In this document: piece after piece, positions 4,446 through 17,423 of the stretch
How positions within the stretch are numbered: the first letter of the stretch is position 1
How the letters are laid out: each line of letters begins with the position of its first letter
IMG/VR virus record: IMGVR_UViG_3300013093_000017
Location: 62,001 to 126,000 of that record
Length of the DNA stretch: 64,000 nucleotides
Reading direction: 5' to 3' (one strand)
Translations under genes and position numbers: made by a program
The notes under the pieces: model-generated
What the model was told of the DNA's origin: nothing
Databases searched by the model: none
Seen by the model: only the letters and a program-made list of their open reading frames with translations

Positions 4446-5065
4446 TAGAATTGAACCCTTACTCCGGCTCCAGCATGCGGATATTTGCCATTGTGATATT
4501 TGTAATATATTAGATGTGAGTCTTCATAGTACTCTCCTACTACATCAGGAAGATACCAACGTTTAGATCCCCACATCTCGTGTGTTGGAGTTAGCACGCT
4601 AAGTTCATTATCTTCTACAACAAATGTGATAGGAAGATCCTGCGCAATTGCGTAACGATACGCTTCACTCCATGCACCTGTTTCGGAACTCATATCTCCT
4701 GTCCAGCACCAAACGTGTTCTCCGGTGCCTTTCAGTTTGGCTGCTAGTGCTAGTCCAGTAGCAATACTAGGAATGCCACCGACTATGCTTGAACATATAA
4801 ATTTGTATTCTGGCAGGTTCATAACCATGCTCTTGCCCGCTAAAATACGCTCACGCAATAGATCTTTTGGAATGCCTTTCAGCAATGCCTGATAATGATT
4901 GCGCCAAGTACAGCATACCCAATCTTTCTTAATATCGATCTTTTCAAATACCTGTATGATCTGTTCTTCATTACCATCATATAAGTGAATAGGCGCACGG
5001 ATTTCTTTGTTATTAAATCTGTTGCCTATTTCAGTTTCAAAATCAATTAGGTCTTGTTTGTTCAT
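4445..5065 (-). CDS. TPP-dependent enzyme, E1-alpha-like subunit
   Basis: HLYDGNE, SSIVGG, GDMSSETG...VEDN TPP-binding motif. Confidence 0.8.
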   Translation of the reverse strand: MNKQDLIDFETEIGNRFNNKEIRAPIHLYDGNEEQIIQVFEKIDIKKDWVCCTWRNHYQALLKGIPKDLLRERILAGKSMVMNLPEYKFICSSIVGGIPSIATGLALAAKLKGTGEHVWCWTGDMSSETGAWSEAYRYAIAQDLPITFVVEDNELSVLTPTHEMWGSKRWYLPDVVGEYYEDSHLIYYKYHNGKYPHAGAGVRVQF

Positions 5066-6381
5066 GCAAATTTACTCATAAATTGATCAACGATCGTTCC
5101 GATGTACGCAATCTGTTCTAGTGTTACAACAGGACTGGTACCAAGGAAGAATGTGTTTAACATCACATGTGTTGCTACTGGAAATTGATCACGAGCAGTC
5201 TGCGGATCCATTAGATGATCGTAAGCAGGTTGTAACATGATATTGCCAGCAAAGTAAGGGCGTGTTTGGATCTTAGCATCTTCTAAGAAGTCTACAATAT
5301 CAGCACGCTTAAATGGCGCATCTGGACGAATAGTTAATGCAAAGGCAAACCAGCTTGGATCACTATGCTCACGAGCACGTGGTAACATAAAGAATTTTTC
5401 ATATTTTTCAAATACACTAAACAACGCTGAATAGTTTTCTCTACGGCGTGCTTCGATCACTGGCAATTTATCTAATTGCTTAAGGCCCATGCTACCCTGT
5501 AGCTCAATTGGTTTGATGTTGTAACCAATTTCATCATATACATATTTGTGATCAAAGATTTCATCTTTCAACGCAGGAATCCAATTGCTAAAGCGTGTCT
5601 TACAACTACCGCATTTCAATTTGTTTGCTTCTGGTCCTACACAGTAACAGCCACGACCCCATTCACGGAAACTGCGCAGGATGTCTTCTGTTACCTTACC
5701 GTTACAGGCAACAAAGCCGCCTTCTCCCATGGTGATGTGATGTGCTGGGTAGAAACTGCAACTGGCCATTTCACCAAAACTACCTAATGGTTTGCCATCG
5801 TAGGTAGTGCCTAGTCCATCACAACAATCCTCTAATAAGATTAAATTGTATTTTTCAACAAGTGCCATCAGTTGTCGCATGTTTGGCGGATTGCCTAAGA
5901 CATGTGCAAATGTAATCACACGTATATCTGGATCTGCTGCTAGAATTGCCTCTGCTTGATCTAAATCTAAATTTAATGTGTCAAACTCAATATCCACAAA
6001 CACAGGAACAAAGCCCACTTGTAACATTGGATTAAGTGTTGTTGGAAATCCTGCAATAGGTGTTAGTACTTTAGTACCTACTGGTAGATTATGTCCACGT
6101 TTACTTTTCAGTGCTGACATCATCAATAGGTTAGCACTTGAACCACTGTTGGTTAACACGCCATTTGTCTTGTCAAAGTACTTGGGAAATTTATTCTCAA
6201 AACGTGAGCAATCATTGCCCATGACTAACCACCCTTTGAGTAGGGTTTCTACTGCGGCCACACTTTCTTCTGCGTCAAACAATGGACCTGCGTAATTAAC
6301 AAAGTCCTCACCAGCACGCCATGTTTTGGCTGCTTGTTTATCTTCTACGTATTTTCTAACTTGATCTAAAATTTCTTTCAT
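5062..6381 (-). CDS. rfbH: CDP-4-keto-6-deoxyglucose 3-dehydrase (RfbH/DdhC; DegT family)
   Basis: NSGSSANL, SFYPAHHITMGEGG with His in place of the PLP lysine, WGRGCYC, DHKY. Confidence 0.9.
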   Translation of the reverse strand: MKEILDQVRKYVEDKQAAKTWRAGEDFVNYAGPLFDAEESVAAVETLLKGWLVMGNDCSRFENKFPKYFDKTNGVLTNSGSSANLLMMSALKSKRGHNLPVGTKVLTPIAGFPTTLNPMLQVGFVPVFVDIEFDTLNLDLDQAEAILAADPDIRVITFAHVLGNPPNMRQLMALVEKYNLILLEDCCDGLGTTYDGKPLGSFGEMASCSFYPAHHITMGEGGFVACNGKVTEDILRSFREWGRGCYCVGPEANKLKCGSCKTRFSNWIPALKDEIFDHKYVYDEIGYNIKPIELQGSMGLKQLDKLPVIEARRRENYSALFSVFEKYEKFFMLPRAREHSDPSWFAFALTIRPDAPFKRADIVDFLEDAKIQTRPYFAGNIMLQPAYDHLMDPQTARDQFPVATHVMLNTFFLGTSPVVTLEQIAYIGTIVDQFMSKFA

Positions 6382-7994: not shown

Positions 7995-8060
7995 TCACTG
8001 TAATCTTAATTTAATATATGCGCACATAAATAAGAGTATCATATTGAAAGCGAGATTACA

Positions 8061-9122
8061 ATGGCCACCAAAATTTTATTCATTCTTAAACGCCGAGAAG
8101 ATTATAATGAAATAACACACAGCCCTAAAGGATTATCCACGGGGCTGTTCAACTCGGCAAGTTTCATGGAACAGATGCTAAACGAATCGGGCATCGAATC
8201 TGTATTAGAAGTAGCGATTGACAATAACTGTATTGATCGATTAGTCCAAAAACATAAACCTTCACATGTTATTATTGAAGCACTTTGGGTAGTACCACAA
8301 AAGTTTGCTGTCCTAACTAAACTACATCCCGGAGTAAAGTGGATCATTCGCTTGCATAGTGAAATGCCGTTTATGGCTGGCGAAGGAATGGCCATGGATT
8401 GGTTAGGTGATTACGTTACCTATCCGCAGATTACTATTGGCGTAAATGCTCCACGCATGTTAGACGAAGTACAGACATTCTTAAGACTTAGCCAGTCTTG
8501 GTCAAATACCACTACAAAAAATCGTGTGGTGTATATGCCAAATTATTACCCAAAAGATTATAAAACAAAGACATTCGATCATAATAAAGAATATATAGAC
8601 ATTGCCTGTTTTGGTGCAGTTCGCCCATTAAAGAATCATATGGTGCAAGCAGTGGCAGCAGTAAAGTTTGCCGATCAACTGAACAAAAAATTAAGATTCC
8701 ATATTAATGTGGGACGTATTGAAATGAAAGGTGATCCAGTATTAAACAATCTACGTGGATTTTTCCAACACCTGTATGATCGTGGACATCAAATGATCGG
8801 ACACGAGTGGCGTCAGCGTGATGGATTCTTAGATCTATGCAGCGAAATGGATATTGGCCTACAATGTAATTTCAGCGAAACATTTAATATAGTATCAGCT
8901 GACCTAATCAGTCAAGGTGTGCCAGTAGTGGGCAGTTACGAAATACCGTGGGCAACTAGATGGTTTAATGCTCGTCCAGCAGAAAGCGATGAGATAGCCA
9001 GTAAAATGATGTTAACATATCAATTTCCAGATATTAATGTTTGGTTAAATCAACGTAATTTAGATAAATACACTAATAAAACCCGTAGGATATGGGAACA
9101 ACTGTTTAATGGAGTAATATAA
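8061..9122 (+). CDS. Putative GT-B fold glycosyltransferase
   Basis: FGAVRPLKNH and SETFNIVSADLISQGVPVV resemble GT4-type motifs. Confidence 0.65.
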   Translation: MATKILFILKRREDYNEITHSPKGLSTGLFNSASFMEQMLNESGIESVLEVAIDNNCIDRLVQKHKPSHVIIEALWVVPQKFAVLTKLHPGVKWIIRLHSEMPFMAGEGMAMDWLGDYVTYPQITIGVNAPRMLDEVQTFLRLSQSWSNTTTKNRVVYMPNYYPKDYKTKTFDHNKEYIDIACFGAVRPLKNHMVQAVAAVKFADQLNKKLRFHINVGRIEMKGDPVLNNLRGFFQHLYDRGHQMIGHEWRQRDGFLDLCSEMDIGLQCNFSETFNIVSADLISQGVPVVGSYEIPWATRWFNARPAESDEIASKMMLTYQFPDINVWLNQRNLDKYTNKTRRIWEQLFNGVI

Positions 9123-9313
9123 TGAGCAAATTTAAAGTAAGAAAAGACACGTGGGTAGAAGGCATATTGCAAGTTGAAGAGGTATTATTTGATCTATTCG
9201 AAGATGCTGTAGCACACGTTAAGCACAGTCATCACCATGGTGCTAAAGTAATCGATGAAGAAGGTCGCGTGATCCATCGCGAAGGTCCAGCTACTGGCGA
9301 ATCGTACGCTTAA
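9122..9313 (+). CDS. Hypothetical protein
   Basis: 63 aa, SD GGAG, coupled to the upstream stop. Confidence 0.7.
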   Translation: MSKFKVRKDTWVEGILQVEEVLFDLFEDAVAHVKHSHHHGAKVIDEEGRVIHREGPATGESYA

Positions 9314-9334
9314 TAAAATAATTGAAAATAATGG

Positions 9335-9363
9335 TTGACAGGCGATTATTTTCAATATATAAT
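9335..9363 (+). promoter_or_regulatory. sigma70 promoter P1 of tRNA array leader
   Basis: TTGACA-17-TATAAT, followed by AGCTACATA. Confidence 0.85.
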
Positions 9364-9428
9364 AGCTACATATTTAGAGATTGATAAATAATCTTATAAA
9401 TAAAAGATAAATAAATTATCAAAAGAGG

Positions 9429-9457
9429 TTGACAACAACTAAATTTGATAATATAAT
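9429..9457 (+). promoter_or_regulatory. sigma70 promoter P2 of tRNA array leader
   Basis: TTGACA-17-TATAAT, followed by the same AGCTACATA as P1. Confidence 0.85.
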
Positions 9458-9494
9458 AGCTACATAGTAAGAAATTAATTAAAGGGAAAAGACA

Positions 9495-9644
9495 ATGTTT
9501 ACAACGCAACATCAATTTAGAGGATCGAAACAAGTGCAACTACTTGCCACGATGTCTTATTGGTCAGCGATTGAGACATTTGGCGGCAATGATCGCACAC
9601 CGAGTAATTGTATTAGGGTTCGAGAGGGATGGGATGGTTATTAA
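9495..9644 (+). CDS. Putative attenuator leader peptide (49 aa, all 20 amino acids)
   Basis: SD AAGGGA; MFTTQHQFRGSKQVQLLATMSYWSAIETFGGNDRTPSNCIRVREGWDGY*; its 3' end overlaps the antiterminator. Confidence 0.7.
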   Translation: MFTTQHQFRGSKQVQLLATMSYWSAIETFGGNDRTPSNCIRVREGWDGY

Positions 9645-9679
9645 GTAAATAACAAAATCCAAAACTTTAAGAACCCTAA
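9613..9679 (+). promoter_or_regulatory. Putative antiterminator hairpin
   Basis: TTAGGGTTC (9613-9621) pairs with GAACCCTAA (9671-9679); inner helices GGAT/ATCC and GTTATT/AATAAC. Confidence 0.7.
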
Positions 9680-9707
9680 GATCGAAAGACTTAGGGTTTT
9701 TTGTTTT
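9672..9707 (+). terminator. Rho-independent terminator (attenuator)
   Basis: AACCCTAAG-a-TC-GAAA-GA-CTTAGGGTT followed by a T-rich tract. Confidence 0.85.
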
Positions 9708-9810
9708 ATGTGTCTAGGAAACGAGGTCCAAGACAAGGCACATTAAAGATTGTATGTTGAACTGGCGGACAAGTGGATGGCATTTCCTTTTGTGGAAAGA
9801 AAATACTTGT

Positions 9811-9898
9811 TATAATAAAGCATTCTAACACGGGTAGGTAACGTGTGGGGAAGAAATTGCCCCTAGAGTGCTTTATTATACGCATTCATATGAGTGCG
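9811..9898 (+). ncRNA. Structured RNA: long closed stem plus adjacent hairpin
   Basis: TATAATAAAGCATTCTA...TAGAGTGCTTTATTATA, then CGCATTCATATGAGTGCG. Confidence 0.45.
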
Positions 9899-9905
9899 TT
9901 AACAG

Positions 9906-9986
9906 ATTGCAGTATTTTAGGTGGGCACCTACAGCGGCGGCAGCCGTCAAGATCGCAACTTGAGAGGTTCGAGTCCTCACTGCAAT
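9906..9986 (+). ncRNA. tRNA-like RNA without canonical anticodon arm or CCA
   Basis: ATTGCAGT/ACTGCAAT closing stem, T-arm GAGG-TTCGAGT-CCTC, three internal hairpins. Confidence 0.5.
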
Positions 9987-10038
9987 ATTTTAATACGGCC
10001 TTTGTCGCTAGCATAGCTGGTGCTCAAAGGTTCTTTAT

Positions 10039-10116
10039 CGGAGTGTATGTCAGTCTGGCTAGACGGCCTGCTTTGGGAGCAGGAGGCCGTAGGTTCGAAT
10101 CCTACCATTCCGACCA
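10039..10116 (+). tRNA. tRNA-Pro(TGG)
   Basis: Cloverleaf, CCTGC-TT-TGG-GA-GCAGG, CCA. Confidence 0.93.
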
Positions 10117-10120
10117 ATAT

Positions 10121-10196
10121 GTCCCTATCATCTAGCGGCCTAGGATACTGCCCTTTCACGGCAGGTACACGAGTTCGAATCTCGTTAGGGACACCA
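10121..10196 (+). tRNA. tRNA-Glu(TTC)
   Basis: CTGCC-CT-TTC-AC-GGCAG, CCA. Confidence 0.93.
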
Positions 10197-10202
10197 AATA
10201 AT

Positions 10203-10289
10203 GAGTGTTCGGGGACGTGGGAGTGTCTCGGCTGGCTGTAACCCAGTTGCCTTATGGCTTAGTAGGTTCGAATCCTACAACATTCACCA
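10203..10289 (+). tRNA. tRNA-Tyr(GTA)
   Basis: GCTGG-CT-GTA-AC-CCAGT, long variable arm, CCA. Confidence 0.88.
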
Positions 10290-10295
10290 AGTTAT

Positions 10296-10390
10296 GTCGC
10301 AGTTCCAGTTACACTAATCTCTCAGTTCAAAGCTGTTAGTGTGTAAAGGACACGAGAAAGTCAACTTCTTCTGGGTAGACTGTGACGCCA
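10296..10390 (+). ncRNA. CCA-terminated non-cloverleaf structured RNA
   Basis: GTCGCAGT/ACTGTGAC stem followed by G-CCA; internal TTACACTAA/TTAGTGTGTAA helix. Confidence 0.4.
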
Positions 10391-10394
10391 TTTT

Positions 10395-10504
10395 TAGACT
10401 CGTGTAGGAACTTTGAGATCGTATAACCTCTTGAAACTGGATAAGTGAGAGCCAGGCCAGTCAAAAACACGTACGGTAAATGCTGTGCAACTCGGCAGAG
10501 TCTA
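10395..10504 (+). ncRNA. Structured RNA with T-arm-like 3' hairpin
   Basis: TAGACTC/GAGTCTA closing stem; GCTG-TGCAACT-CGGC hairpin just before the 3' strand. Confidence 0.35.
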
Positions 10505-10619
10505 TTTTATAGTAGTAAATTTTTAGGAGAAACCAAAGTGAAGAGTACTAAACTTTAGTGTCATCTTTAATCCCATGTATGATTAAGGATAGGCACGTTA
10601 AACATCTTTATACATATAT

Positions 10620-10694
10620 GGGGGTATAATTCAATGGCTAGAATATCCGGCTTTTACCCGGACTATCAGAGTTCAAATCTCTGTGCCCTCACCA
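10620..10694 (+). tRNA. tRNA-Lys(TTT)
   Basis: TCCGG-CT-TTT-AC-CCGGA, CCA. Confidence 0.92.
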
Positions 10695-10699
10695 ACATA

Positions 10700-11581
10700 T
10701 TAAATTACATTCAGTGAGTGCAATTTAGTATGTTGTAATAATTTTAACAGTTGTTTTATTTTACTACCTGCTTGGTATTCGTCGTATGATATTCTAAATA
10801 CAGTAATGCCTAAATGGGTTTGTATATATGCATCACGCAGTTCGTCTGCTTCTTTATGTTTAGGCTTTTCGTGTTGTTTACCGTCAAGTTCTACTATAAG
10901 ATTTACGGTAGGGAAATAATAATCAACAAAATACCATTTACCTGTTAGATGATTTTTAATAAAGTGTTCGTCAATGTACTTGGTGGATATTTTATTATCA
11001 ACTAACCATCGTTCAAATGATTGTTCTAAATAAGATTTTTTATCTCTTCTGTAATTGCTTCTGCGATTGGTTTTGATGCGTTTAATTATCTTATCGGAAA
11101 TTAAAGATGACTTACATTCATCTGAACAGGTTTTGCGGTGACTGTGTTTAATAACAGTACCACATTGATGACAAAAAGATACTTTTGAATATTGCGGCAA
11201 TGGGTTTTCGTTATTATATTTTTGGACGCCCTTTGAGATTTTTTGTTTTCGGTTGAGGTCTATAGCAATACCTTTTCTATCTTTATTGTAATACACAGCA
11301 GAGCAAGATGTAGAACAAAATTTGTTATGTCTTCTTTTGTATTCGAGTGCTAAATTACATTGAATACATTTAGACGGAGACTGGATATAATCTAATTTTA
11401 TAGATTTTAATTTTTTATTATTTGCCTTAACAGCAGATATTTGTCCAAGTTTGCCATTTTTAAGATTTCGTAGTTTGCCTTCTTTGGTATGAGAAATAAG
11501 ATAATGAGAATGTATTCCTTTAGAGGTTTTGGGTTCTCGACAAACTACGCAGGAGCAAGGATAAGATGTTTTATTAGTCAT
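10700..11581 (-). CDS. Free-standing homing endonuclease (Zn-finger N-terminus, DUF559/Vsr-like nuclease)
   Basis: Several CxxC pairs; YFVDYYFP..LIVELDGKQH..D..RD; antisense inside the tRNA array; TATAAATA upstream on the minus strand. Confidence 0.75.
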   Translation of the reverse strand: MTNKTSYPCSCVVCREPKTSKGIHSHYLISHTKEGKLRNLKNGKLGQISAVKANNKKLKSIKLDYIQSPSKCIQCNLALEYKRRHNKFCSTSCSAVYYNKDRKGIAIDLNRKQKISKGVQKYNNENPLPQYSKVSFCHQCGTVIKHSHRKTCSDECKSSLISDKIIKRIKTNRRSNYRRDKKSYLEQSFERWLVDNKISTKYIDEHFIKNHLTGKWYFVDYYFPTVNLIVELDGKQHEKPKHKEADELRDAYIQTHLGITVFRISYDEYQAGSKIKQLLKLLQHTKLHSLNVI

Positions 11582-11628
11582 ACAAGTATTTATACATCAA
11601 AACGAATTTCTCCTACCAAATTGAAATA

Positions 11629-11720
11629 CCATACAAAAACACATTCTTCAAAGAATACAGGGTTCAATTCCCGGCCGTTGATCACGGAACTGCCAAGGTG
11701 GTGAGTGTATTCCTATATGG
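11629..11720 (+). ncRNA. Structured RNA with internal T-arm-like hairpin
   Basis: CCATA..ACATTC / GAGTGT..TATGG closing stem; GGG-TTCAATT-CCC. Confidence 0.35.
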
Positions 11721-11726
11721 TTCAAT

Positions 11727-11801
11727 GTTGTCTATAGTGTAGTGGTAGCACCCAATCCTGTGAAGATTGTAGTATGAGATCGATACTCATTAGACAACCC
11801 A
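11727..11801 (+). tRNA. tRNA-His(GTG)
   Basis: G-1 8-bp acceptor, CAATC-CT-GTG-AA-GATTG, atypical T-loop ATCGATA, CCA. Confidence 0.88.
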
Positions 11802-11808
11802 AAGTTTT

Positions 11809-11883
11809 GCCTCGTTCATATAGTGGTTATTATGTCCGCCTGTCTAGTGGAACATAGGGGTTCGATTCCCCTACGAGGCGCCA
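11809..11883 (+). tRNA. tRNA-Asp(GTC)
   Basis: TCCGC-CT-GTC-TA-GTGGA, CCA. Confidence 0.9.
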
Positions 11884-11892
11884 AATTAAAGG

Positions 11893-11921
11893 TTGACGTG
11901 AAAAATCGTTGACTATATAAT
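11893..11921 (+). promoter_or_regulatory. Internal sigma70 promoter in tRNA array
   Basis: TTGACG-17-TATAAT. Confidence 0.75.
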
Positions 11922-11943
11922 AGTAACAGTTAGAAAGATCAAT

Positions 11944-12016
11944 TGCGGTAGAAGTGTAGTGGCGCATGATAGTCTCATAAGCTATCGGGGTGGTTCGATT
12001 CCAACGTCCGCATCCA
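11944..12016 (+). tRNA. tRNA-Met(CAT), imperfect stems
   Basis: ATAGT-CT-CAT-AA-GCTAT, TTCGA loop, CCA; mismatches in acceptor and T stems. Confidence 0.7.
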
Positions 12017-12032
12017 TAATTAGGAGAAGTAA

Positions 12033-12194
12033 ATGGCAGTTAAGAAAGCAAATCCAATGCAGACACGCACTGGTAAGACACGGTTAGGTCCATTGAATTT
12101 AACACAGTTACAAACTATGTTAGAAAAGACTTCTAAGAAAAAGATCAAGGCGCAGATTCAAAAGCGCATTGCAGAATTAGAAGCACGTAAGTAA
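12033..12194 (+). CDS. Small basic hypothetical protein (53 aa), not in ORF track
   Basis: SD AGGAGA; MAVKKANPMQTRTGKTRLGPLNLTQLQTMLEKTSKKKIKAQIQKRIAELEARK. Confidence 0.75.
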   Translation: MAVKKANPMQTRTGKTRLGPLNLTQLQTMLEKTSKKKIKAQIQKRIAELEARK

Positions 12195-12202
12195 AGTTTT
12201 AC

Positions 12203-12277
12203 GCCCAGTTAGCAGAGTGGTAATGCGCCTCACTTGTAATGAGGATATCGGGAGTTCGATTCTCTCACTGGGCACCA
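12203..12277 (+). tRNA. tRNA-Thr(TGT)
   Basis: CCTCA-CT-TGT-AA-TGAGG, CCA. Confidence 0.93.
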
Positions 12278-12284
12278 GTATTAA

Positions 12285-12369
12285 GCCCCTTTGGTGGAAT
12301 TGGTAGACACCGCGGTCTTAGAAGCCGCCGACGAAAGTCATGAGAGTTCGAGTCTCTTGGGGGGCACCA
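12285..12369 (+). tRNA. tRNA-Leu(TAG)
   Basis: GCGGT-CT-TAG-AA-GCCGC, long variable arm, CCA. Confidence 0.92.
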
Positions 12370-12379
12370 AAAGTTTTAT

Positions 12380-12453
12380 GCGGGATTAGTTTAATGGTAG
12401 AACTGCAGATTTCCAATCTCCTGGTGAGGGTTCGATTCCCTTATCCCGCTCCA
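12380..12453 (+). tRNA. tRNA-Gly(TCC)
   Basis: GCAGA-TT-TCC-AA-TCTCC, CCA. Confidence 0.9.
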
Positions 12454-12458
12454 GAACA

Positions 12459-12669
12459 CAAGGTTTACACTTTTACCTTATAGAAAGTGGGTCATTGCTA
12501 ATACCAGAACGGCAGGGTGCGCACGATGGTCTAGACCATACCACAAGTCCCACTATCCGGGAGCCTTGAAAGTATCGTGGGAGTTTTATTGTTTCTTACC
12601 ATATGGAAACAGTTGGACAGGGTAACTACTCAGTTTTGGGCTCGGTTGTGCGAGTAGCAAAACACTGAT
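12459..12669 (+). ncRNA. Candidate structured ncRNA(s) between tRNA-Gly and tRNA-Ala
   Basis: CAAGGTT/AGCCTTG multibranch with CACTTTT/AGAAAGTG, TGGTCTAGACCA and TCCC/GGGA hairpins; no credible ORF. Confidence 0.35.
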
Positions 12670-12671
12670 TC

Positions 12672-12746
12672 GGGCTGTTAGTATACTGGGTATTATTCCT
12701 GCCTTGCACGTAGGAGAAGACGGATCGTAACCGTCACGGTCCACCA
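12672..12746 (+). tRNA. tRNA-Ala(TGC)
   Basis: G3:U70 pair, CCTGC-CT-TGC-AC-GTAGG, T-loop ATCGTAA, CCA. Confidence 0.9.
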
Positions 12747-12752
12747 TATTAT

Positions 12753-12829
12753 AGAGGATTAGCTCAGTTGGTACGAGCAACTGCCTTACAAGCAGAAGGT
12801 CACTGGTTCGACCCCAGTATCCTCTACCA
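12753..12829 (+). tRNA. tRNA-Val(TAC)
   Basis: CTGC-CT-TAC-AA-GCAG, CCA. Confidence 0.93.
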
Positions 12830-12836
12830 GTTCTAT

Positions 12837-12915
12837 TCCGCAGAATCCGAGCTAGGCGCACGGACTTGACTGTTAATCAATGATTAGCTGGGTTCGAATC
12901 CCAGATGCGGAGCCA
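12837..12915 (+). tRNA. tRNA-Asn(GTT)
   Basis: TTGA-CT-GTT-AA-TCAA, CCA. Confidence 0.88.
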
Positions 12916-12919
12916 TATT

Positions 12920-13020
12920 TGCAGAGCGTGGGCTAGTCTAGCGTCGACGTACACTCCGAGTTAGTTGCAACTAACAACAGATTGTGAAAACTAGACAACG
13001 AGGTTCGATTCCTTACTGCA
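12920..13020 (+). ncRNA. tRNA-like RNA, same acceptor/T-arm module as 9906-9986
   Basis: TGCAG...GAGG-TTCGATT-CCTT-ACTGCA; internal GTCTAG/CTAGAC and GTTAGTTGCAACTAAC helices. Confidence 0.5.
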
Positions 13021-13029
13021 TCTTAAATT

Positions 13030-13490
13030 TATCGTCGATAGCCGGAGCAAATCCTTTGAGCGGCTTGAGCATAAGCAAGGCACCGAGACGCAGGTGTATA
13101 TTTCCGGTGAAAGTCCGGACGGTAATAGATTTTATCTCCCTCCGTAAAGGATGGAACAGTGAGCTCTCAGTTCCCTGCAAGGTAGTAGTAGACAAGAAGC
13201 AAACAGGCGTACTAGTCATACGCAATGTGCTGATTAGGTCGCTATGCAACCTCTGACAATAGGTCATGACTGGCCAACGATAGGAGACACTTGTAAAGCT
13301 CTCACAGTTTAACCGGTGGTGAAAATCCACAGGGGAGGCCAGTTTTGGGATAGACGGCAAGATCTTAAACGAGTCCTAAGTAGCGTCAGTAGTACGAAAC
13401 ACATTTTGCGCGAAATATAGATGAGCTCTCTTGTTCGAGACAATCCAGCAAGGCCTTTGGAGAAAAGGATAGCTGGGCGCCCAAAAACCC
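13030..13490 (+). ncRNA. Candidate large structured ncRNA (~460 nt; GOLLD/ROOL-type context)
   Basis: GC-richer non-coding block with T-loop hairpins CCGG-TGAAAGT-CCGG and GTGG-TGAAAAT-CCAC and long-range helices CTGGCC/GGCCAG and TTTTGGG/CCCAAAA. Confidence 0.55.
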
Positions 13491-13496
13491 TTTTAT

Positions 13497-13571
13497 GCTT
13501 CGGTAGCTCAGTGGTAGAGCAATCGGTTGATAACCGATAGGCCGGTGGATCGTTCCCACCTCGAAGCACCA
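13497..13571 (+). tRNA. tRNA-Ile(GAT)
   Basis: ATCGG-TT-GAT-AA-CCGAT, T-loop ATCGTTC, CCA. Confidence 0.9.
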
Positions 13572-13579
13572 TTTATATG

Positions 13580-13608
13580 TTGACAGACGGATAAACATCT
13601 GTTATACT
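13580..13608 (+). promoter_or_regulatory. Internal sigma70 promoter
   Basis: TTGACA-17-TATACT. Confidence 0.75.
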
Positions 13609-13775
13609 ATGTTTTAAGATTTGGAAGAAAGCCGGTACATTATGTATTCGAGGTTAGGAGAGACCGGCAAACCGTCCGATTAGAGTAGGTAATACTGCGG
13701 TTCGACTCCGCCGATTGAATTACTGTATGATTCTGCACATACCTAACAGGCCTGTATTGGCCGCAGATCGTTTAT

Positions 13776-13864
13776 GGAAGGTTATGCAATCTGGGATATT
13801 GCCGCGCACTTGAAATGCGCTGGAGCCTACGGGCCAGGAGTTCGATTCTGCCATCCTTCCGCCA
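13776..13864 (+). tRNA. tRNA-Ser(TGA)
   Basis: GCGCA-CT-TGA-AA-TGCGC, long variable arm, G73-CCA. Confidence 0.85.
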
Positions 13865-13876
13865 GTTTGAAAATAC

Positions 13877-13967
13877 GGAGAGTGGGCCGGACGGTAAGGC
13901 ACCACCCTGCTAAGGTGTACACTTGTGATGAACAGGTGACAGGGTTCGACTCCCTGACTCTCCGCCA
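13877..13967 (+). tRNA. tRNA-Ser(GCT)
   Basis: CACC-CT-GCT-AA-GGTG, long variable arm, CCA. Confidence 0.92.
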
Positions 13968-13972
13968 AATAC

Positions 13973-14008
13973 CCGGTGTTAGTTAAATGGATATAACAGG
14001 GGATTTCG
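13973..14008 (+). pseudogene. 5' half of a tRNA-Arg-like gene, truncated in the anticodon loop
   Basis: CCGGTGT-TA-GTTA-AATGGATA-TAAC-A-GGGGA-TTTC, then an abrupt switch to TATAAATA. Confidence 0.65.
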
Positions 14009-14022
14009 TATAAATAAACAAT

Positions 14023-14099
14023 GCGGTTGTAGCTCAGTGGATTAGAGCAACGAGCTTCTACCTCGTTGGCCGGGGGTTCGAGTCCCTCCAGCCGCACCA
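14023..14099 (+). tRNA. tRNA-Arg(TCT)
   Basis: ACGAG-CT-TCT-AC-CTCGT, CCA. Confidence 0.93.
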
Positions 14100-14114
14100 T
14101 TTAATAGAATACTT

Positions 14115-14798
14115 ATGTATCAAAAATTAACTAACTGTAAATATTGCAATGTTTCATTACTTGAAATGACTACTTCTCGGCGAGCAAATCACTCTCGATG
14201 GTGCAAACTAAATCCTAAGCATACTGAATATATAAATGCATTAGAAATTTCTAGAGAGAATATAGTTAATCGACGTAATCAATTTATGAAGGCTAAAGAG
14301 GATGGAAGGCCGATTCCGCCAGGAACACAGACCGGAAAACCAGGTACAATGTTAGGTAAGAAGCATTCTTCTAAAACTAAACAGCGTCAAAAAGAAAAGG
14401 CACTAGCAAGTCCTCATAGAAGATTAGTTAGATCTATTCGGAAATATACAAAAAAGGACGGAACTATAGTTAGTTTAGATTCGTTCTGGGAAGAAGCATT
14501 AGCTATTCGGCTTGATACTATAGGTGTTAACTGGATAAGACCGTCGCCTATTAAATGGATAGACAATGATAACGTAACTCATAATTACTTTCCAGATTTC
14601 TATCTACCAGAGTTTGATTTATATTTAGATCCAAAAAACCCGTATGCTGTCAAAGCTCAACAAGTTAAGATACAGTGTTTAAAACAGCAAATACAAAACC
14701 TTATAATTATAACAAGTTTAGAGGATTGCAACAATTATATTCCTCAACCAGTATTGCCCTATAGTTCAATGGAAGAACGGCTCCCTTATAAGGAGTGA
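14115..14798 (+). CDS. Free-standing homing endonuclease (NUMOD3-like repeat, PD-(D/E)XK nuclease)
   Basis: GKKHSSKTKQRQKE, SFWEE, YFPDFYLPEFDLYLDPK; its 3' end overlaps tRNA-Ile(TAT). Confidence 0.75.
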   Translation: MYQKLTNCKYCNVSLLEMTTSRRANHSRWCKLNPKHTEYINALEISRENIVNRRNQFMKAKEDGRPIPPGTQTGKPGTMLGKKHSSKTKQRQKEKALASPHRRLVRSIRKYTKKDGTIVSLDSFWEEALAIRLDTIGVNWIRPSPIKWIDNDNVTHNYFPDFYLPEFDLYLDPKNPYAVKAQQVKIQCLKQQIQNLIIITSLEDCNNYIPQPVLPYSSMEERLPYKE

Positions 14799-14846
14799 GT
14801 GCTAGATAAGCCGCTAATGTAGGTTCGAGTCCTACTAGGGGTACCA
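14755..14846 (+). tRNA. tRNA-Ile(TAT) with long variable arm
   Basis: GCTCC-CT-TAT-AA-GGAGT, ~20 nt variable arm, CCA; top of acceptor stem imperfect. Confidence 0.75.
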
Positions 14847-14848
14847 AT

Positions 14849-14923
14849 GCTGATGTAGCGTAGAGGTAGCGCAACGCCTTGGTAAGGCGTAGGTCGTGGG
14901 TTCAACTCCCATCATCAGCACCA
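14849..14923 (+). tRNA. tRNA-Thr(GGT)
   Basis: ACGCC-TT-GGT-AA-GGCGT, CCA. Confidence 0.92.
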
Positions 14924-14942
14924 GCAATACAGTAAGATCAAT

Positions 14943-14972
14943 TGGCTCATGGTGTAGTGGTAGCACAACTCA
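14943..14972 (+). pseudogene. 5' fragment of a tRNA-Gln-like gene
   Basis: TGGCTCA-TG-GTGT-AGTGGTA-GCAC-A-ACTCA; ends before the anticodon loop. Confidence 0.6.
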
Positions 14973-15012
14973 AAAAAATCCTTTATGTTGCTAAATACAG
15001 TAAGGAGATAAT

Positions 15013-15573
15013 ATGTTAGTTACTATTATAGAATACATGAACCAGACGAGAGAAGAAAGACGCTCTCGATTAAAGTTAGATGAACCATGCGATGAGCGCG
15101 GATTAGTGTACAGTTATCATTTAACTGGGCTATTAGCGTACTTAACAAACACAAGTATACCTAAAAAAGGTGATAACGCTATTGTGTGTCATGGATGTAA
15201 CAACGCAAAATGTTCAAACCCAAATCATTTATATTGGGGATCTTATAAGGATAATCATACGGATCAGGTTGAAAATGGAACATGGGATAGTCCGTATGCT
15301 AGGGCTAAGAAAAAATACAGTACTGTTGAGATGAATGAGATATACTCAAACAATGCCAAAGGTAATAAAGGTAATAAACAACCTAGATCCGAAGAGCATA
15401 AAAGAAAAATATCTGAGTCAATGAAAAAAGTTCAGCAAGAACTAAATCCTAATTTAGGAAAAGTAAGAAACAAAGTAGAATGCCCTCATTGTGGAAAGCA
15501 AGGTGCTATGAATACAATGAGCCGATGGCATTTTGATAATTGTCTTAATAGGCGTGTGGTGAAGATGGCTTAA
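15013..15573 (+). CDS. Free-standing HNH homing endonuclease with NUMOD3-like repeat and Zn ribbon
   Basis: VCHGCNNAKCSNPNHLYWGSYKDN, RSEEHKRKISESMK, CPHCGK; its 3' end overlaps tRNA-Gln. Confidence 0.8.
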   Translation: MLVTIIEYMNQTREERRSRLKLDEPCDERGLVYSYHLTGLLAYLTNTSIPKKGDNAIVCHGCNNAKCSNPNHLYWGSYKDNHTDQVENGTWDSPYARAKKKYSTVEMNEIYSNNAKGNKGNKQPRSEEHKRKISESMKKVQQELNPNLGKVRNKVECPHCGKQGAMNTMSRWHFDNCLNRRVVKMA

Positions 15574-15627
15574 CACACTGGATTTTGATTCCAGCATTCC
15601 TAGGTTCGAATCCTAGCACGCCTGCCA
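15550..15627 (+). tRNA. tRNA-Gln(TTG)
   Basis: CTGGA-TT-TTG-AT-TCCAG, CCA. Confidence 0.92.
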
Positions 15628-15747
15628 GAACAGTCCGGGAACAGCTCTCCTTTCGTAAGAAAGTGTAACTGACTATAGCTGGGATTTACCAGTGAACTTA
15701 CAGGACGCTGTAAGGTACGGGCATACAGGAGGATAACTCCAATCTAT

Positions 15748-15821
15748 TCCGGTGTAGTATAATGGCAGTGCGACGGTCTCCAAAACCGTTAGTGGGGGTT
15801 CGATTCCCTCCACCGGAGCCA
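15748..15821 (+). tRNA. tRNA-Trp(CCA)
   Basis: ACGGT-CT-CCA-AA-ACCGT, CCA. Confidence 0.93.
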
Positions 15822-15830
15822 AACAATGTG

Positions 15831-15859
15831 TTGACTTTTAGTTAAGTTGATAGTATAAT
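15831..15859 (+). promoter_or_regulatory. sigma70 promoter
   Basis: TTGACT-17-TATAAT. Confidence 0.75.
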
Positions 15860-15886
15860 GTGCTTTTATTTGAAATGGAGCATGAA

Positions 15887-16351
15887 ATGTCAAAAGTTAT
15901 TAAATCAGAGTATGTTGAAGCAGCCATGGAACAATTAGATAGTGCGGCTAAATTACTCAAAACAGCCTACACCAATCCAAACAAAAATCTTGTGTTAATA
16001 TTAGACATGATTGATGATATTTGGGGGCAATTAGAATTGCTAGCTGATACACAGTACGACAAAGAAAATCCAGGTAAAGAAATGACGCAGGCTCAATATG
16101 ACACTGAGCACAGTGAGCGGGTGGCTAGGATTAAAGCCCTACAAGAAGTTACCATTACCAAAGTAGACAAGGCCACATTCAAAGCCATTAGTGATGATTT
16201 ATACACAGCAATTGGCAATGTCAGTGGCAAATACAATCTGTCTATTGCCTTTCCGTTATCCAGTTTCTCATTCCGTGCCTATGATTCGGAGAATCCCGAG
16301 CAGTATTGGCCACTAGGTAGAGAGTTTGATACAGAAATAAATCCATTATAG
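15887..16351 (+). CDS. Hypothetical protein
   Basis: ORF 15860-16351; likely start ATG 15887 after SD GGAG. Confidence 0.7.
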   Translation: MSKVIKSEYVEAAMEQLDSAAKLLKTAYTNPNKNLVLILDMIDDIWGQLELLADTQYDKENPGKEMTQAQYDTEHSERVARIKALQEVTITKVDKATFKAISDDLYTAIGNVSGKYNLSIAFPLSSFSFRAYDSENPEQYWPLGREFDTEINPL

Positions 16352-16352
16352 G

Positions 16353-16381
16353 TTGACAGGTACCATATGCTCCTGTATTAT
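16353..16381 (+). promoter_or_regulatory. sigma70 promoter
   Basis: TTGACA-17-TATTAT. Confidence 0.65.
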
Positions 16382-16409
16382 TAATGAATAGTCAAAAGGA
16401 CAAAAGAAT

Positions 16410-16979
16410 ATGAACGTTACATTACGTAAAGCAAGTGCGTTACAGAACGCAATCAACGACACAATCAAAGGCATTCAGCTTAAAGTAGCTGTAAACCTAA
16501 GTGAGTTCCAAGATGCAGAAACAGTAATTTCTAAATCTCGCCAAGCATTGTTAAACAATGTTGATCGCAAGGTAGCACTAACCAAGGCATTGTATGCAAT
16601 TCGCGCCTCAGTAGGTGCAGCAAACAACGCCTCAGTAGATGCACTGTTGGCACAGGTAGCACAGGTTGAAAAAACAATCCAAATCTACACAAACTTAGCT
16701 GAAACAGAAGTGCGTGAAGATGCCACAGTTATTGCAGGTAAGTTGGATAAGATTAAGAACCGCACAGCAGATGCTCGTCCAAGTTACTACGGACACAGTG
16801 ACGAAGTAAACACCAGTGTATTAACACAAGATGATATTGAATCTTTCCGAGGTTTCATTGCACTGGCAAAGAAAAACAAACAGACTTTGCAGGATCAAAT
16901 CCTTGAAGCAAACGTTCGCACTGAAATCACTTTAGATGCAGACACAGTAGCAACACTAACAGCAGAAAAATTGCTGTAA
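16410..16979 (+). CDS. Helical protein, possibly DIP1984-like family
   Basis: Coiled-coil pattern; C-terminal LQDQILEANVRTEITL resembles the DIP1984-type ending (family call tentative). Confidence 0.6.
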   Translation: MNVTLRKASALQNAINDTIKGIQLKVAVNLSEFQDAETVISKSRQALLNNVDRKVALTKALYAIRASVGAANNASVDALLAQVAQVEKTIQIYTNLAETEVREDATVIAGKLDKIKNRTADARPSYYGHSDEVNTSVLTQDDIESFRGFIALAKKNKQTLQDQILEANVRTEITLDADTVATLTAEKLL

Positions 16980-17021
16980 TAGTTTTTGGTGGTTTGGCTC
17001 TAGGGCTAAAATCACCCAGAT

Positions 17022-17249: not shown

Positions 17250-17261
17250 ATCTGTTTCTTC

Positions 17262-17339: not shown

Positions 17340-17340
17340 T

Positions 17341-17416: not shown

Positions 17417-17423
17417 GCTTTAC

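What the first reader, a model, noticed from the sequence alone, without database searches (positions are those of the whole stretch)
10039..11883. The attenuator-proximal tRNA block is enriched in common anticodon-nuclease targets
Seen: the tRNAs between the attenuator and the next internal sigma70 promoter (11893) are Pro, Glu(TTC), Tyr, Lys(TTT), His and Asp; later tRNAs have their own promoters (11893, 13580, 15831, 16353, 17747). Known: Lys-UUU is cut by PrrC, Glu/Lys/Gln by RloC, and Tyr/His/Asp/Asn by colicin E5-type nucleases. Inference: an inducible rescue block followed by constitutive blocks.
Basis: partly seen in the sequence, partly recalled or inferred. Interest (0 to 1): 0.6.

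Follow-up and report, generated by a model that had tools for sequence, protein, structure and literature searches.

The report
Attenuator-gated lead block of phage tRNAs
In this uncultured jumbo phage, a conserved translation-sensing RNA switch sits ahead of the first six tRNA genes, so the phage may make more of these tRNAs when protein synthesis falters; a specific role against host tRNA-cutting defences remains possible but unproven.

Summary
tRNAs Pro, Glu, Tyr, Lys, His and Asp lie at 10039-11883, between a terminator and a near-consensus promoter at 11893. Five of the six read NAN codons (nominal P = 8e-4). The "nuclease-target" set is identical to the NAN codon-box set and was chosen after the fact.

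New here: the "attenuator" is real. Two perfect promoters drive a 49-codon ORF whose 3' end can pair with the 5' half of a terminator. This four-segment design recurs in 44 related metagenomic loci, always upstream of tRNA genes. It is kept by compensatory changes (own-partner test P = 4e-4), while the peptide evolves neutrally (pN/pS 1.2-1.4).

The ancestral gated block is Pro-Tyr-Lys-Asp, closed by a conserved promoter. Glu and His are arrivals specific to this window, and Asn is missing. In distant relative L063 the same switch gates about 24 tRNAs of all kinds.

Codon demand explains Asp, Lys, Glu and Tyr but not His or Pro. Four of the six block tRNAs carry rare anticodon-loop variants (P about 0.02-0.04, post hoc), and tRNA-Lys lacks the PARIS AriB motif.

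Verdict: partly supported. An inducible block is plausible. An anti-nuclease purpose is untested, and there are no expression data.

The parts
9335..9363 (+). Promoter P1, TTGACA-17-TATAAT (12/12)
   Evidence: The -35 element is conserved in relatives. Tandem strong promoters precede the leader in all relatives.
9429..9457 (+). Promoter P2, TTGACA-17-TATAAT (12/12)
   Evidence: Conserved in alignments A1 and A2.
9495..9644 (+). Leader ORF of 49 codons; stop codon at 9642-9644
   Evidence: The frame is kept in 12 or more distinct versions and all indels are multiples of three. pN/pS is 1.2-1.4 and variable sites by codon position are 9/10/10. Homologous ORFs of 24-51 codons with largely different peptides occur in L063, L077, L039, L033 and L058. 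No Pfam or PHROG match.
9591..9602 (+). Segment 1 (GAUCGCACACC; codons Asp33-Arg34-Thr35-Pro36). It pairs with segment 2.
   Evidence: Predicted 1:2 hairpin in every version, for both ORF 3'-end types. Invariant at the nucleotide level even in L063 and L077.
9613..9623 (+). Segment 2, the antiterminator strand (UUAGGGUUCGA), inside the last 10 codons of the leader ORF
   Evidence: Pairs with 9671-9679. The constrained antiterminator fold is -30.3 against -31.1 kcal/mol for the terminator fold, and it is the MFE of the nascent transcript. Duplex energy is far below shuffles in 12 of 12 versions. Own-partner test P = 4e-4.
9669..9702 (+). Intrinsic terminator: segment 3 at 9669-9680, loop, segment 4 plus U-run at 9690-9702
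   Evidence: dG -18.6, z -3.9. The stem is kept as CCCUAAG, CCCUAG, CCCCAGG or CCCUAGG with matching 3' strands. 96.6% of cells paired on alignment A3.
9703..9800 (+). Highly conserved non-coding spacer after the terminator
   Evidence: Nearly invariant in alignment A1. Function unknown.
9810..9899 (+). Two conserved hairpins (9810-9880 and 9880-9899), probably RNA processing signals. The first contains a TGnTATAAT match at 9808-9816.
   Evidence: Compensatory changes in both stems in L002, L005 and L063. The whole leader region is strongly structured, z = -6.3.
9906..9986 (+). tRNA-like element: acceptor stem, T-arm and long extra arm, but a tetraloop where the anticodon loop should be
   Evidence: Cloverleaf-like fold. 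Present in the window and the L002 type with compensatory acceptor-stem changes, absent from L004 and L005. Not called by ARAGORN or Rfam.
10039..10116 (+). tRNA-Pro(TGG)
   Evidence: It is the first tRNA after the attenuator in most relatives.
10121..10196 (+). tRNA-Glu(TTC), here in block 1
   Evidence: In relatives Glu lies in the second block, after Met/Thr or after Asp. 87% identical to relatives' Glu.
10203..10289 (+). tRNA-Tyr(GTA), anticodon loop CUGUAAC
   Evidence: This loop occurs in 1 of 17 distinct relatives' tRNA-Tyr. Only 62-64% identical to relatives' Tyr.
10296..10390 (+). Element Y: ultra-conserved non-coding RNA with a 7-bp acceptor-like stem followed by G-CCA
   Evidence: 98-100% identical in relatives whose leader is 77-88% identical. 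No ORF, no Rfam hit. Lies just upstream of tRNA-Lys in relatives.
10620..10694 (+). tRNA-Lys(TTT), anticodon loop CUUUUAC
   Evidence: This loop occurs in 0 of 13 relatives. Positions 36-41 read UACCCG and so lack the UAAU motif that AriB recognises.
10700..11581 (-). 293-aa endonuclease-like ORF (DUF559, Vsr-like C-terminal domain). A mobile insertion specific to this window.
   Evidence: Pfam PF04480, E = 9.6e-9. No homologue in any related locus. Weak similarity to phage homing endonucleases.
11650..11690 (+). Fragment resembling the 3' end of a tRNA (T-arm-like GGGUUCAAUUCCC)
   Evidence: Read from the sequence. No homologue in relatives.
11728..11801 (+). tRNA-His(GTG), anticodon loop CUGUGAA, here in block 1
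   Evidence: In relatives His is the last tRNA of block 2, after Gly(GCC). Only 65-72% identical to relatives' His. This loop occurs in 2 of 11 relatives.
11809..11883 (+). tRNA-Asp(GTC), anticodon loop CUGUCUA (U at position 37). The conserved last member of block 1.
   Evidence: This loop occurs in 4 of 16 relatives. 93% identical to Asp of L002 and L106.
11893..11921 (+). Promoter P3 (11/12), which closes block 1 and opens block 2
   Evidence: A promoter scoring 11-12 of 12 sits directly after Asp in L005, L081, L083, L088, L106, L133 and L069.
11945..12012 (+). Degenerate tRNA-Met-like gene (CAT anticodon), first gene of block 2
   Evidence: Rfam tRNA at 29.5 bits, just over threshold. Relatives have tRNA-Met at this slot.

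Best explanation
The six tRNAs form the first sub-operon of a phage tRNA array, and a ribosome-mediated transcription attenuator gates it.

How it is built:
- Two consensus sigma-70 promoters (9335, 9429) drive a 49-codon leader ORF.
- The last 10 codons of the ORF contain segment 2 (9613-9623).
- Segment 2 can pair either with upstream segment 1 (9591-9602) or with segment 3, the 5' half of the terminator (9669-9680).

How it is inferred to work:
- A ribosome that reaches the end of the ORF sits on or next to segment 2. The terminator then forms and transcription stops at about 9702.
- A ribosome that stalls earlier, on or before the Asn-Asp-Arg-Thr-Pro codons of segment 1, leaves segment 2 free to capture segment 3. 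Polymerase then reads on into Pro, Glu, Tyr, element Y, Lys, His and Asp.
- The block is therefore expressed more when translation in the infected cell is slow. This would be a tRNA-supply feedback loop.
- The rest of the array runs from its own promoters, with no room for such a switch.

The tRNAs placed nearest the switch are mostly NAN-codon decoders. These are both the most demanded by this AT-rich phage and the commonest nuclease targets. The switch senses translation in general and cannot tell these two causes of shortage apart.

Shown: the anatomy, its conservation, covariation of the helices, and non-protein-like evolution of the ORF. Inferred: translation of the ORF, the direction of regulation, and any physiological trigger.
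For: - Anatomy and near-equal energies of the two folds (-31.1 vs -30.3 kcal/mol); the antiterminator is the MFE of the nascent RNA.
- In 12 of 12 distinct versions the terminator's 5' half is complementary to the ORF's 3' end: -12 to -18 kcal/mol against about -8.5 +/- 2 for shuffles (0/300 shuffles as good in 8 versions, at most 16/300 in the rest). This holds across two unrelated ORF 3' ends and three terminator stems.
- Type-B alignment: antiterminator 98.3% paired, two compensatory positions, 3 of 500 shuffles as good; slid controls 24-66% paired. Terminator 96.6% paired.
- Divergent homologues in L063, L077, L039, L033 and L058 have different peptides of 24-51 codons but keep the design.
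- Each segment 2 pairs best with its own segment 3, P = 4e-4, with U:A to C:G changes.
- A segment 1:2 hairpin is predicted in all versions.
- pN/pS is 1.2-1.4 with the frame always open.
- The profile finds the leader in 44 loci, always followed by tRNAs wherever downstream sequence exists, and only once in the phage's own genome.
- The block boundary is conserved: a strong promoter sits right after Asp.
- The promoters are far above chance.
Against: - Termination, read-through and translation of the ORF are all unmeasured.
- The leader has no tandem run of regulatory codons, and it is not enriched in codons read by the block (9 of 49 vs 13.5 expected).
- One covarying pair on the type-B alignment lies in a helix that can coexist with the terminator. 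Type-B covariation for the exclusive part of the antiterminator is therefore thin, and the cross-family test carries that weight.
- A TGnTATAAT match at 9808-9816, downstream of the terminator, could be an independent promoter.
- The Shine-Dalgarno spacing is long in relatives.
- The host is unknown.
Confidence: 0.55

Rival explanations
1. One reading: the block is specifically a rescue kit against host anticodon nucleases. It supplies nuclease-resistant copies of the tRNAs that PrrC, RloC, PARIS, retron Eco7 or colicin-E5-like enzymes cut, and it is induced when those enzymes stall translation.
For: - Five of the six tRNAs are published targets (PMC11555353 and PMC10264068).
- Block-1 tRNAs carry rare anticodon-loop variants: Tyr 1/17, Lys 0/13, His 2/11, Asp 4/16 of relatives share the window's loop. 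Against the other 18 tRNAs this gives Mann-Whitney P = 0.02 and Fisher P = 0.04.
- Published escape mutations map to the same part of the tRNA.
- The window's tRNA-Lys reads UACCCG at positions 36-41 and lacks the AriB motif UAAUC|A.
- Glu and His were moved into the gated block only in this lineage.
- An attenuator that responds to stalled ribosomes would respond to tRNA cleavage.
Against: - The target set equals the NAN box and was chosen after the fact.
- The ancestral block Pro-Tyr-Lys-Asp gives only about P = 0.05 (my arithmetic on the 26-tRNA order).
- Other targets lie outside the block (Thr-UGU, Gln) or are absent from the record (Asn).
- Pro is not an established target.
- In L063 the switch gates about 24 tRNAs of all kinds.
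- Colicin-E5-type enzymes recognise the anticodon itself, which a phage copy shares.
- Block-1 tRNAs are no more diverged overall than the rest (0.81 vs 0.82).
- No tRNA repair genes were found, though the record is only 65% complete.
- The host and its defences are unknown.
- The loop statistics are post hoc.
Confidence: 0.25
2. Codon supply only: the promoter-proximal position simply gives the highest dosage to the tRNAs whose codons this AT-rich phage uses most. The terminator merely tunes the level, with no defence connection.
For: - Asp (61 per 1000 codons), Lys (60.5) and Glu (53.4) are the three most demanded specificities, and Tyr (42.6) is also high.
- Block 1 averages 43.4 cognate codons per 1000 against 29.1 for the rest (Mann-Whitney P = 0.038).
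- NAN decoders are early in several differently ordered relatives: L063 P = 1e-4, L050 P = 0.004, L071 P = 0.005.
Against: - His (18.1) and Pro (24.5) are in low demand yet sit in the block.
- Rank against demand over the whole array is weak (Spearman -0.33, P = 0.11).
- Asn (63 per 1000) and the TTA codon (34.7) have no phage tRNA in this record.
- The phage-versus-host comparison that defines codon compensation could not be made, because the host is unresolved.
- Supply alone does not explain a conserved bistable switch.
Confidence: 0.3
3. Historical accident: the order reflects shared ancestry plus shuffling by mobile endonucleases. The enrichment in this window is a chance by-product, and the small ORF with its terminator is just a short early gene.
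For: - The array is highly mosaic. Slot-for-slot tRNA identity ranges from 62% to 100%.
- His arrived together with a window-specific endonuclease insertion.
- Three endonuclease-like ORFs lie in the array.
- Relatives differ by many insertions, deletions and moves.
- The relatives are not phylogenetically independent.
Against: - Despite that shuffling, the frame 'attenuator, Pro ... Asp, promoter' persists.
- The ORF does not evolve like a protein.
- Its 3' end co-varies with the terminator.
Confidence: 0.15

Closest known systems
Leader-peptide (ribosome-mediated) transcription attenuators of bacterial amino-acid operons (trpL, hisL, pheL, thrL, leuL, ilvL)
   Same: A promoter, a short translated ORF, and four RNA segments forming 1:2, 2:3 (antiterminator) and 3:4 (terminator plus U-run). 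The ribosome's position on the ORF decides which helices form. The principle is described in PMC1183508 and PMC3082878 (listed) and in standard textbook accounts.
   Different: There are no tandem regulatory codons. The ORF is longer (24-51 codons). The regulated genes are tRNAs, not biosynthetic enzymes. It is phage-borne. The signal would be general translation speed rather than one amino acid.
Phage T5 tRNA-rich region used as counter-defence (tRNA-Tyr against retron Eco7; tRNA-Lys, Thr and Asn against PARIS AriB; phage tRNA-Lys against PrrC)
   Same: A large phage tRNA array under strong sigma-70-type promoters, including Tyr and Lys. The phage copies differ from canonical sequence around the anticodon loop (PMC11555353; PMC12409363).
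   Different: No attenuator or inducible control is described for T5 in the passages I read. There is no sequence relationship between the two arrays. No host, defence system or rescue phenotype is known here.
Cluster C1 mycobacteriophage tRNAs with anticodon-loop mutations (van den Berg et al., eLife 2023)
   Same: The idea that phage tRNAs replace nuclease-depleted host tRNAs and escape cleavage through loop changes (PMC10264068). The window's Tyr, Lys, His and Asp have rare loops.
   Different: That study compares phage tRNAs with the tRNAs of a known host. Here only relatives could serve as the reference. It does not address gene order or regulation.
Phage T4 tRNA cluster with co-transcribed stable RNAs (species 1 and 2); from my own knowledge, not checked here
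   Same: tRNA genes are interspersed with small structured non-tRNA RNAs that are presumably processed from the same precursor. Compare element Y and the tRNA-like element at 9906-9986.
   Different: No sequence similarity was tested. T4 carries 8 tRNAs, none known to be attenuator-gated.
T-box riboswitches; from my own knowledge
   Same: Terminator/antiterminator switches that raise expression of translation-supply genes when tRNA charging is poor.
   Different: T-boxes bind uncharged tRNA directly and need no ORF. No T-box match was found by Rfam.

Membership tests
Ribosome-mediated (leader-peptide) transcription attenuator | A short ORF lies between the promoter and the regulated genes, and its reading frame is conserved | tested here: met
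   49 codons at 9495-9644. The frame is kept in 12 or more versions with indels in multiples of three. Homologous ORFs of 24-51 codons occur in distant relatives.
Ribosome-mediated (leader-peptide) transcription attenuator | An intrinsic terminator lies between the ORF and the regulated genes | tested here: met
   Hairpin plus U-run at 9669-9702, dG -18.6, z -3.9. Conserved with compensating stem variants.
Ribosome-mediated (leader-peptide) transcription attenuator | A mutually exclusive antiterminator helix exists, one strand of which a ribosome would cover near the end of the ORF | tested here: met
   9613-9621 pairs with 9671-9679. Present in all versions and lying within the last 35 nt of the ORF or overlapping its stop codon. 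Covariation: (P = 4e-4).
Ribosome-mediated (leader-peptide) transcription attenuator | An anti-antiterminator (segment 1:2) lies inside the ORF | tested here: inconclusive
   A bulged 1:2 hairpin is predicted in every version and the invariant segment 1 fits both segment-2 types. It is weak, however, and the nascent-RNA MFE prefers 2:3. There is too little variation for covariation.
Ribosome-mediated (leader-peptide) transcription attenuator | The ORF contains clustered regulatory codons matching the regulated product | tested here: not met
   No tandem runs. Nine of 49 codons are read by block tRNAs against 13.5 expected. Single invariant Asp and Pro codons lie in segment 1, but base pairing alone explains their invariance.
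Ribosome-mediated (leader-peptide) transcription attenuator | Read-through changes when translation of the leader changes | not testable with these tools
Phage tRNA counter-defence against anticodon nucleases | The phage encodes tRNAs with the same anticodons as those the nuclease cuts | tested here: met
   Lys(UUU), Tyr(GUA), Glu(UUC), His(GUG) and Asp(GUC) are in the block. Targets are taken from PMC11555353, PMC10264068, PMC2610378 and PMC12409363.
Phage tRNA counter-defence against anticodon nucleases | The phage copies differ from the host copies at the nuclease's recognition or cleavage site | tested here: inconclusive
   The host is unknown. Against relatives, four of the six block tRNAs have rare loops, and tRNA-Lys lacks the AriB UAAU motif. 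Post hoc, and no host reference.
Phage tRNA counter-defence against anticodon nucleases | The host carries such a nuclease, and the phage tRNA rescues infection | not testable with these tools
   The phage is an uncultured metagenomic contig.
Codon-compensating phage tRNAs | The phage tRNAs match codons that are common in the phage and rare in the host | tested here: inconclusive
   The phage half is partly met: Asp, Lys and Glu are the most demanded, but His and Pro are in low demand and Asn has no tRNA. The host half cannot be tested.

The most novel reading that the evidence does not exclude
A phage-borne, self-regulating counter-defence circuit. When host anticodon nucleases, or any other tRNA shortage, stall ribosomes on the leader's Asn-Asp-Arg-Thr-Pro codons, the attenuator opens. 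The phage then transcribes a block of nuclease-resistant tRNA variants (Tyr, Lys, His and Asp with atypical anticodon loops) together with the ultra-conserved tRNA-like RNA Y. Y itself might act on the same defences. This would be the first leader-peptide attenuator known to control tRNA genes, and the first inducible tRNA-based anti-defence system.
Probability: 0.15. Interest if true: 0.85.

Novelty: new variant of a known kind. Interest (0 to 1): 0.6.

Why it matters
Why phages carry tRNAs, whether for codon supply or to replace tRNAs destroyed by host defences, has been debated for decades and has recently become experimentally tractable. In published work phage tRNA arrays are treated as simply strongly expressed. 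A conserved translation-sensing switch in front of a defined subset of tRNAs would mean some phages monitor translation capacity and adjust tRNA supply accordingly. It also turns the question into a direct experiment. The promoters are E. coli-type consensus, so the 400-nt leader can be fused to a reporter and challenged with amino-acid starvation or with a cloned tRNA nuclease. The family of 44 loci offers natural compensatory variants as ready-made controls.

Tried and rejected
- **Near-identity search of phage records:** only two short tRNA hits. Relatives were found instead through an upstream protein gene and DNA motifs in metagenomic collections.
- **Motif searches:** the first motif pattern was too strict. 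The 17-mer gave many chance matches in unrelated metagenome contigs, which I filtered out by homology and did not analyse further. I took none of the fetched contigs to be human DNA.
- **Host inference:** the phage's AdoHcy hydrolase matches many Pseudomonadota at 62-72% identity, which gives no host. The phage-versus-host codon test and a search of the host for nucleases were therefore dropped.
- **tRNA repair genes:** Rnl1, Rnl2 and RtcB were not found. This is uninformative, because the record is about 65% complete and the Rnl1 model matched none of the control genomes.
- **Leader as codon sensor:** the idea that the leader is rich in the block's own codons was rejected.
- **Leader as small protein:** rejected on pN/pS and on the absence of any family match.
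- **Faster divergence of block-1 tRNAs:** rejected.
- **TGnTATAAT at 9808-9816 as the true promoter of the block:** judged unlikely, because it lies in a stem kept by compensatory changes and is not kept as a -10 element in L002 or L063. It is not excluded.
- **Rfam:** no family matched the leader, element Y or the tRNA-like element.
Full report
**What is there.** The window is positions 62001-126000 of a single 229,675-bp viral contig from a metagenome. It has 38.6% G+C and is estimated to be about 65% complete. All of its tRNA genes lie in one + strand array at window 10039-18674. Seven such sites lie on the + strand of 8000-19500 and none on the - strand, against 0.48 expected by chance on both strands together.

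That gives hypergeometric P = 8.1e-4, with permutation P = 0.007 for adjacency and 0.006 for early position. Two cautions apply.
- The set was chosen after seeing the block, and it is the same as the set of tRNAs that read NAN codons. The statistic therefore cannot separate "nuclease targets" from "NAN decoders".
- The literature now lists many further targets. Overexpressed RloC prefers Glu, then Lys, Arg and Gln, but it also cuts Thr, Ala, Arg and Gly, and its natural substrate is unknown (PMC2610378). PARIS AriB cuts Lys(UUU), Thr(UGU) and Asn (PMC12409363).

A protein gene just upstream (8061-9122) and conserved DNA motifs retrieved 174 related loci. Forty of these hold the leader by BLAST and 44 by profile search. 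One architecture recurs:

two or three strong promoters, a leader ORF plus terminator, Pro Tyr Lys Asp, a strong promoter, Met Thr Glu Leu Gly Ala Val Asn Ile ... Gln Trp Cys Met Arg Gly His, a strong promoter, ... Phe.

Variants insert Ala, lose Tyr or Lys, or carry mobile genes, but the frame "switch, Pro ... Asp, promoter" persists.

The comparison also shows that the ancestral gated block is Pro-Tyr-Lys-Asp.
- Glu and His normally sit in the second, promoter-driven block.
- Asn normally follows Val, and is absent from this record.
- On the ancestral layout of 26 tRNAs with 7 NAN decoders, three of four in the block gives about P = 0.05 (my arithmetic).
- The window's His lies next to a reverse-strand endonuclease-like ORF (Pfam DUF559) and a tRNA fragment. 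Neither has a counterpart in any relative. His therefore probably arrived with a mobile element.

**The attenuator is real.**
- Downstream of two 12/12 promoters lies a 49-codon ORF (9495-9644), followed 25 nt later by a terminator hairpin with a U-run (9669-9702; dG -18.6, z -3.9).
- Bases 9613-9621 inside the ORF are complementary to 9671-9679, the 5' half of the terminator. The fold with this antiterminator is almost as stable as the terminator fold (-30.3 vs -31.1 kcal/mol). It is also the minimum-energy fold of the transcript before the terminator's 3' half exists.
- Across 12 distinct versions the terminator's 5' half is always complementary to the last 15-35 nt of the ORF, far beyond shuffled controls. 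This is so even though the ORF has two unrelated 3' ends and the terminator three stem variants.
- On an alignment of ten type-B versions the antiterminator is paired in 98.3% of cells and has two compensatory positions. Only 3 of 500 shuffles do as well, and sliding the partners gives 24-66% pairing. One of those covarying pairs lies in a helix that can coexist with the terminator, so I sought deeper evidence.
- Divergent homologues in L063, L077, L039, L033 and L058 have leader ORFs of 24-51 codons with largely different peptides. Each one's ORF 3' end matches its own terminator, for example GGGUUC/GAACCC against GGGUCC/GGACCC.
- Each segment 2 pairs best with its own segment 3 (permutation P = 4e-4).
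- An upstream segment 1, GAUCGCACACC (the Asp-Arg-Thr-Pro codons at 9591-9602), is invariant even in distant relatives. It is predicted to pair with segment 2 in both ORF types. That completes the classical four-segment design.
- The ORF evolves like a regulatory leader rather than a protein. pN/pS is 1.2-1.4, variable sites are spread 9/10/10 over the three codon positions, and yet the frame stays open and all indels are multiples of three.
- The element occurs once in the phage's own genome. In the related loci it is followed by tRNA genes wherever enough downstream sequence exists.

**What it probably senses.** The leader has no run of regulatory codons, and it is not enriched in codons read by the block (9 of 49 against 13.5 expected). 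The geometry implies the following.
- A ribosome that reaches the end of the ORF prevents the antiterminator from forming, so transcription terminates.
- A ribosome held up earlier permits the antiterminator, so transcription reads through.

That would make the block respond to slow translation in general. The direction of control is inferred from the anatomy and is not shown. In L063, three promoters and the same switch are followed by about 24 tRNAs of every kind with no strong internal promoter. So the switch is not tied to a particular tRNA set, although NAN decoders again come first there (7 of the first 9, P = 6e-4).

**Defence or demand?**
- *For demand:* Asp, Lys and Glu are the three most demanded specificities in this phage's coding sequence (61, 60.5 and 53.4 cognate codons per 1000), and Tyr is also high (42.6). 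Block 1 exceeds the rest (Mann-Whitney P = 0.038).
- *Against demand:* His (18.1) and Pro (24.5) are in low demand, the rank correlation over the whole array is weak, and the heavily used Asn and TTA codons have no tRNA in this record.
- *For defence:* Phage tRNAs are known to rescue infection from PrrC, PARIS and retron Eco7, and escape changes lie in or next to the anticodon loop (PMC11555353, PMC10264068 and PMC12409363). In this window Tyr, Lys, His and Asp carry loop variants found in 1/17, 0/13, 2/11 and 4/16 of the distinct relatives' tRNAs, whereas most later tRNAs have the majority loop (Mann-Whitney P = 0.02, Fisher P = 0.04). tRNA-Asp has a pyrimidine at position 37. tRNA-Lys reads UACCCG at positions 36-41 and so lacks the UAAUC|A motif that AriB needs, while the second-block tRNA-Thr(UGU) keeps UAAU.
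- *Limits:* These loop observations are post hoc, use relatives rather than the unknown host as the reference, and concern enzymes from E. coli. Block-1 tRNAs are not more diverged overall than the rest. No tRNA repair genes were found, but the record is incomplete.

**Verdict.**
- There is a conserved, probably translation-sensing gate in front of a conserved lead block of tRNAs.
- Later blocks have promoters without such a gate.
- That the block exists to counter anticodon nucleases is one of two live readings, and it is not established.
- The idea of phage tRNAs as counter-defence is already published. A leader-peptide attenuator controlling a phage tRNA array did not surface in my literature search (not exhaustive). 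I rate it a new variant of a known kind.

**Limits of this work.** There are no expression data, no host, and the record is incomplete. Relatives are not phylogenetically independent, and locus flanks were capped at 10 kb, so some array starts may be cut off. Statements about T4 stable RNAs, T-boxes, the canonical E. coli anticodon loops and colicin E5 recognition rest on my own knowledge.

Noticed in passing
window 10296-10390 (+): Element Y is a 95-nt non-coding stretch just 3' of tRNA-Tyr. It is 98-100% identical in relatives whose leader is only 77-88% identical and whose tRNA-Tyr is about 63% identical. It has a 7-bp acceptor-like stem followed by G-CCA and a T-run, but no T-arm, no ORF and no Rfam match. 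In relatives it always lies directly upstream of tRNA-Lys. It may be a processed, tRNA-like stable RNA of unknown function.
   Followed up: partly
window 9906-9986 (+): A tRNA-like element has an acceptor stem, a T-arm (GGUUCGAGUCC) and a long extra arm, but a tetraloop where the anticodon loop should be. It is present in the window and in L002-type relatives with compensatory acceptor-stem changes, and cleanly absent from L004 and L005. Neither ARAGORN nor Rfam calls it.
   Followed up: partly
window 9810-9899 (+): Two hairpins between the terminator and the first tRNA are kept by compensatory changes as far out as L063. The apex of the first is hypervariable. They may be RNase processing sites. 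The first stem contains TGnTATAAT on the + strand and a TATAAT on the - strand.
   Followed up: partly
window 10700-11581 (-), 11650-11690 (+): A 293-aa ORF with a DUF559 (Vsr-like) endonuclease domain sits antisense inside the tRNA block, next to a fragment resembling a tRNA 3' end. Both are absent from all relatives. It looks like a homing-endonuclease insertion that may have brought tRNA-His with it.
   Followed up: partly
window 14115-14798 (+), 15013-15573 (+): Two further endonuclease-like ORFs lie inside the array (PHROG endonuclease / Holliday-junction resolvase-like, and HNH homing endonuclease). This fits the strong mosaicism of the array.
   Followed up: no
window 11945-12012 (+): A degenerate tRNA-Met-like gene (CAT anticodon) scores 29.5 bits in Rfam and is not called by ARAGORN. 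It sits at the slot where relatives have an intact tRNA-Met, directly after the 11893 promoter. A 53-codon ORF with a good ribosome-binding site follows at 12033-12194.
   Followed up: partly
window 12830-13496 (+): Relatives carry tRNA-Asn between Val and Ile. The window has a 670-nt gap there and no tRNA-Asn anywhere in the record, although AAT is its fourth most used codon. Part of the gap (12890-13037) matches sequence that lies next to tRNA-Ala in relatives.
   Followed up: partly
L002 (and L001, L003, L004, L147): In the closest relatives the upstream protein gene (homologue of window 8061-9122) sits inside the array between tRNA-Asp and tRNA-Met, and an inverted paralogue lies upstream of the leader. 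The gene has therefore moved or duplicated relative to the window.
   Followed up: no
window 23405-23499 (+); genome C1:24515-24845: ARAGORN calls an odd tRNA with a two-base anticodon at 23405 (Rfam tRNA-Sec, 24.2 bits, below threshold). It also calls a permuted tmRNA-like gene elsewhere in the genome, outside the window. Both may be false positives.
   Followed up: no
window 21753-23045 (+), 58828-61098 (+), 5062-6381 (-): The phage encodes an S-adenosylhomocysteine hydrolase (62-72% identical to those of diverse Pseudomonadota), a ClpA/ClpB-like double-AAA ATPase and a DegT-family aminotransferase.
   Followed up: partly
window 11809-11883 (+): tRNA-Asp has U at position 37 of the anticodon loop (CUGUCUA), a position that is almost always a purine. 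The same variant occurs in 4 of 16 distinct relatives' tRNA-Asp.
   Followed up: partly
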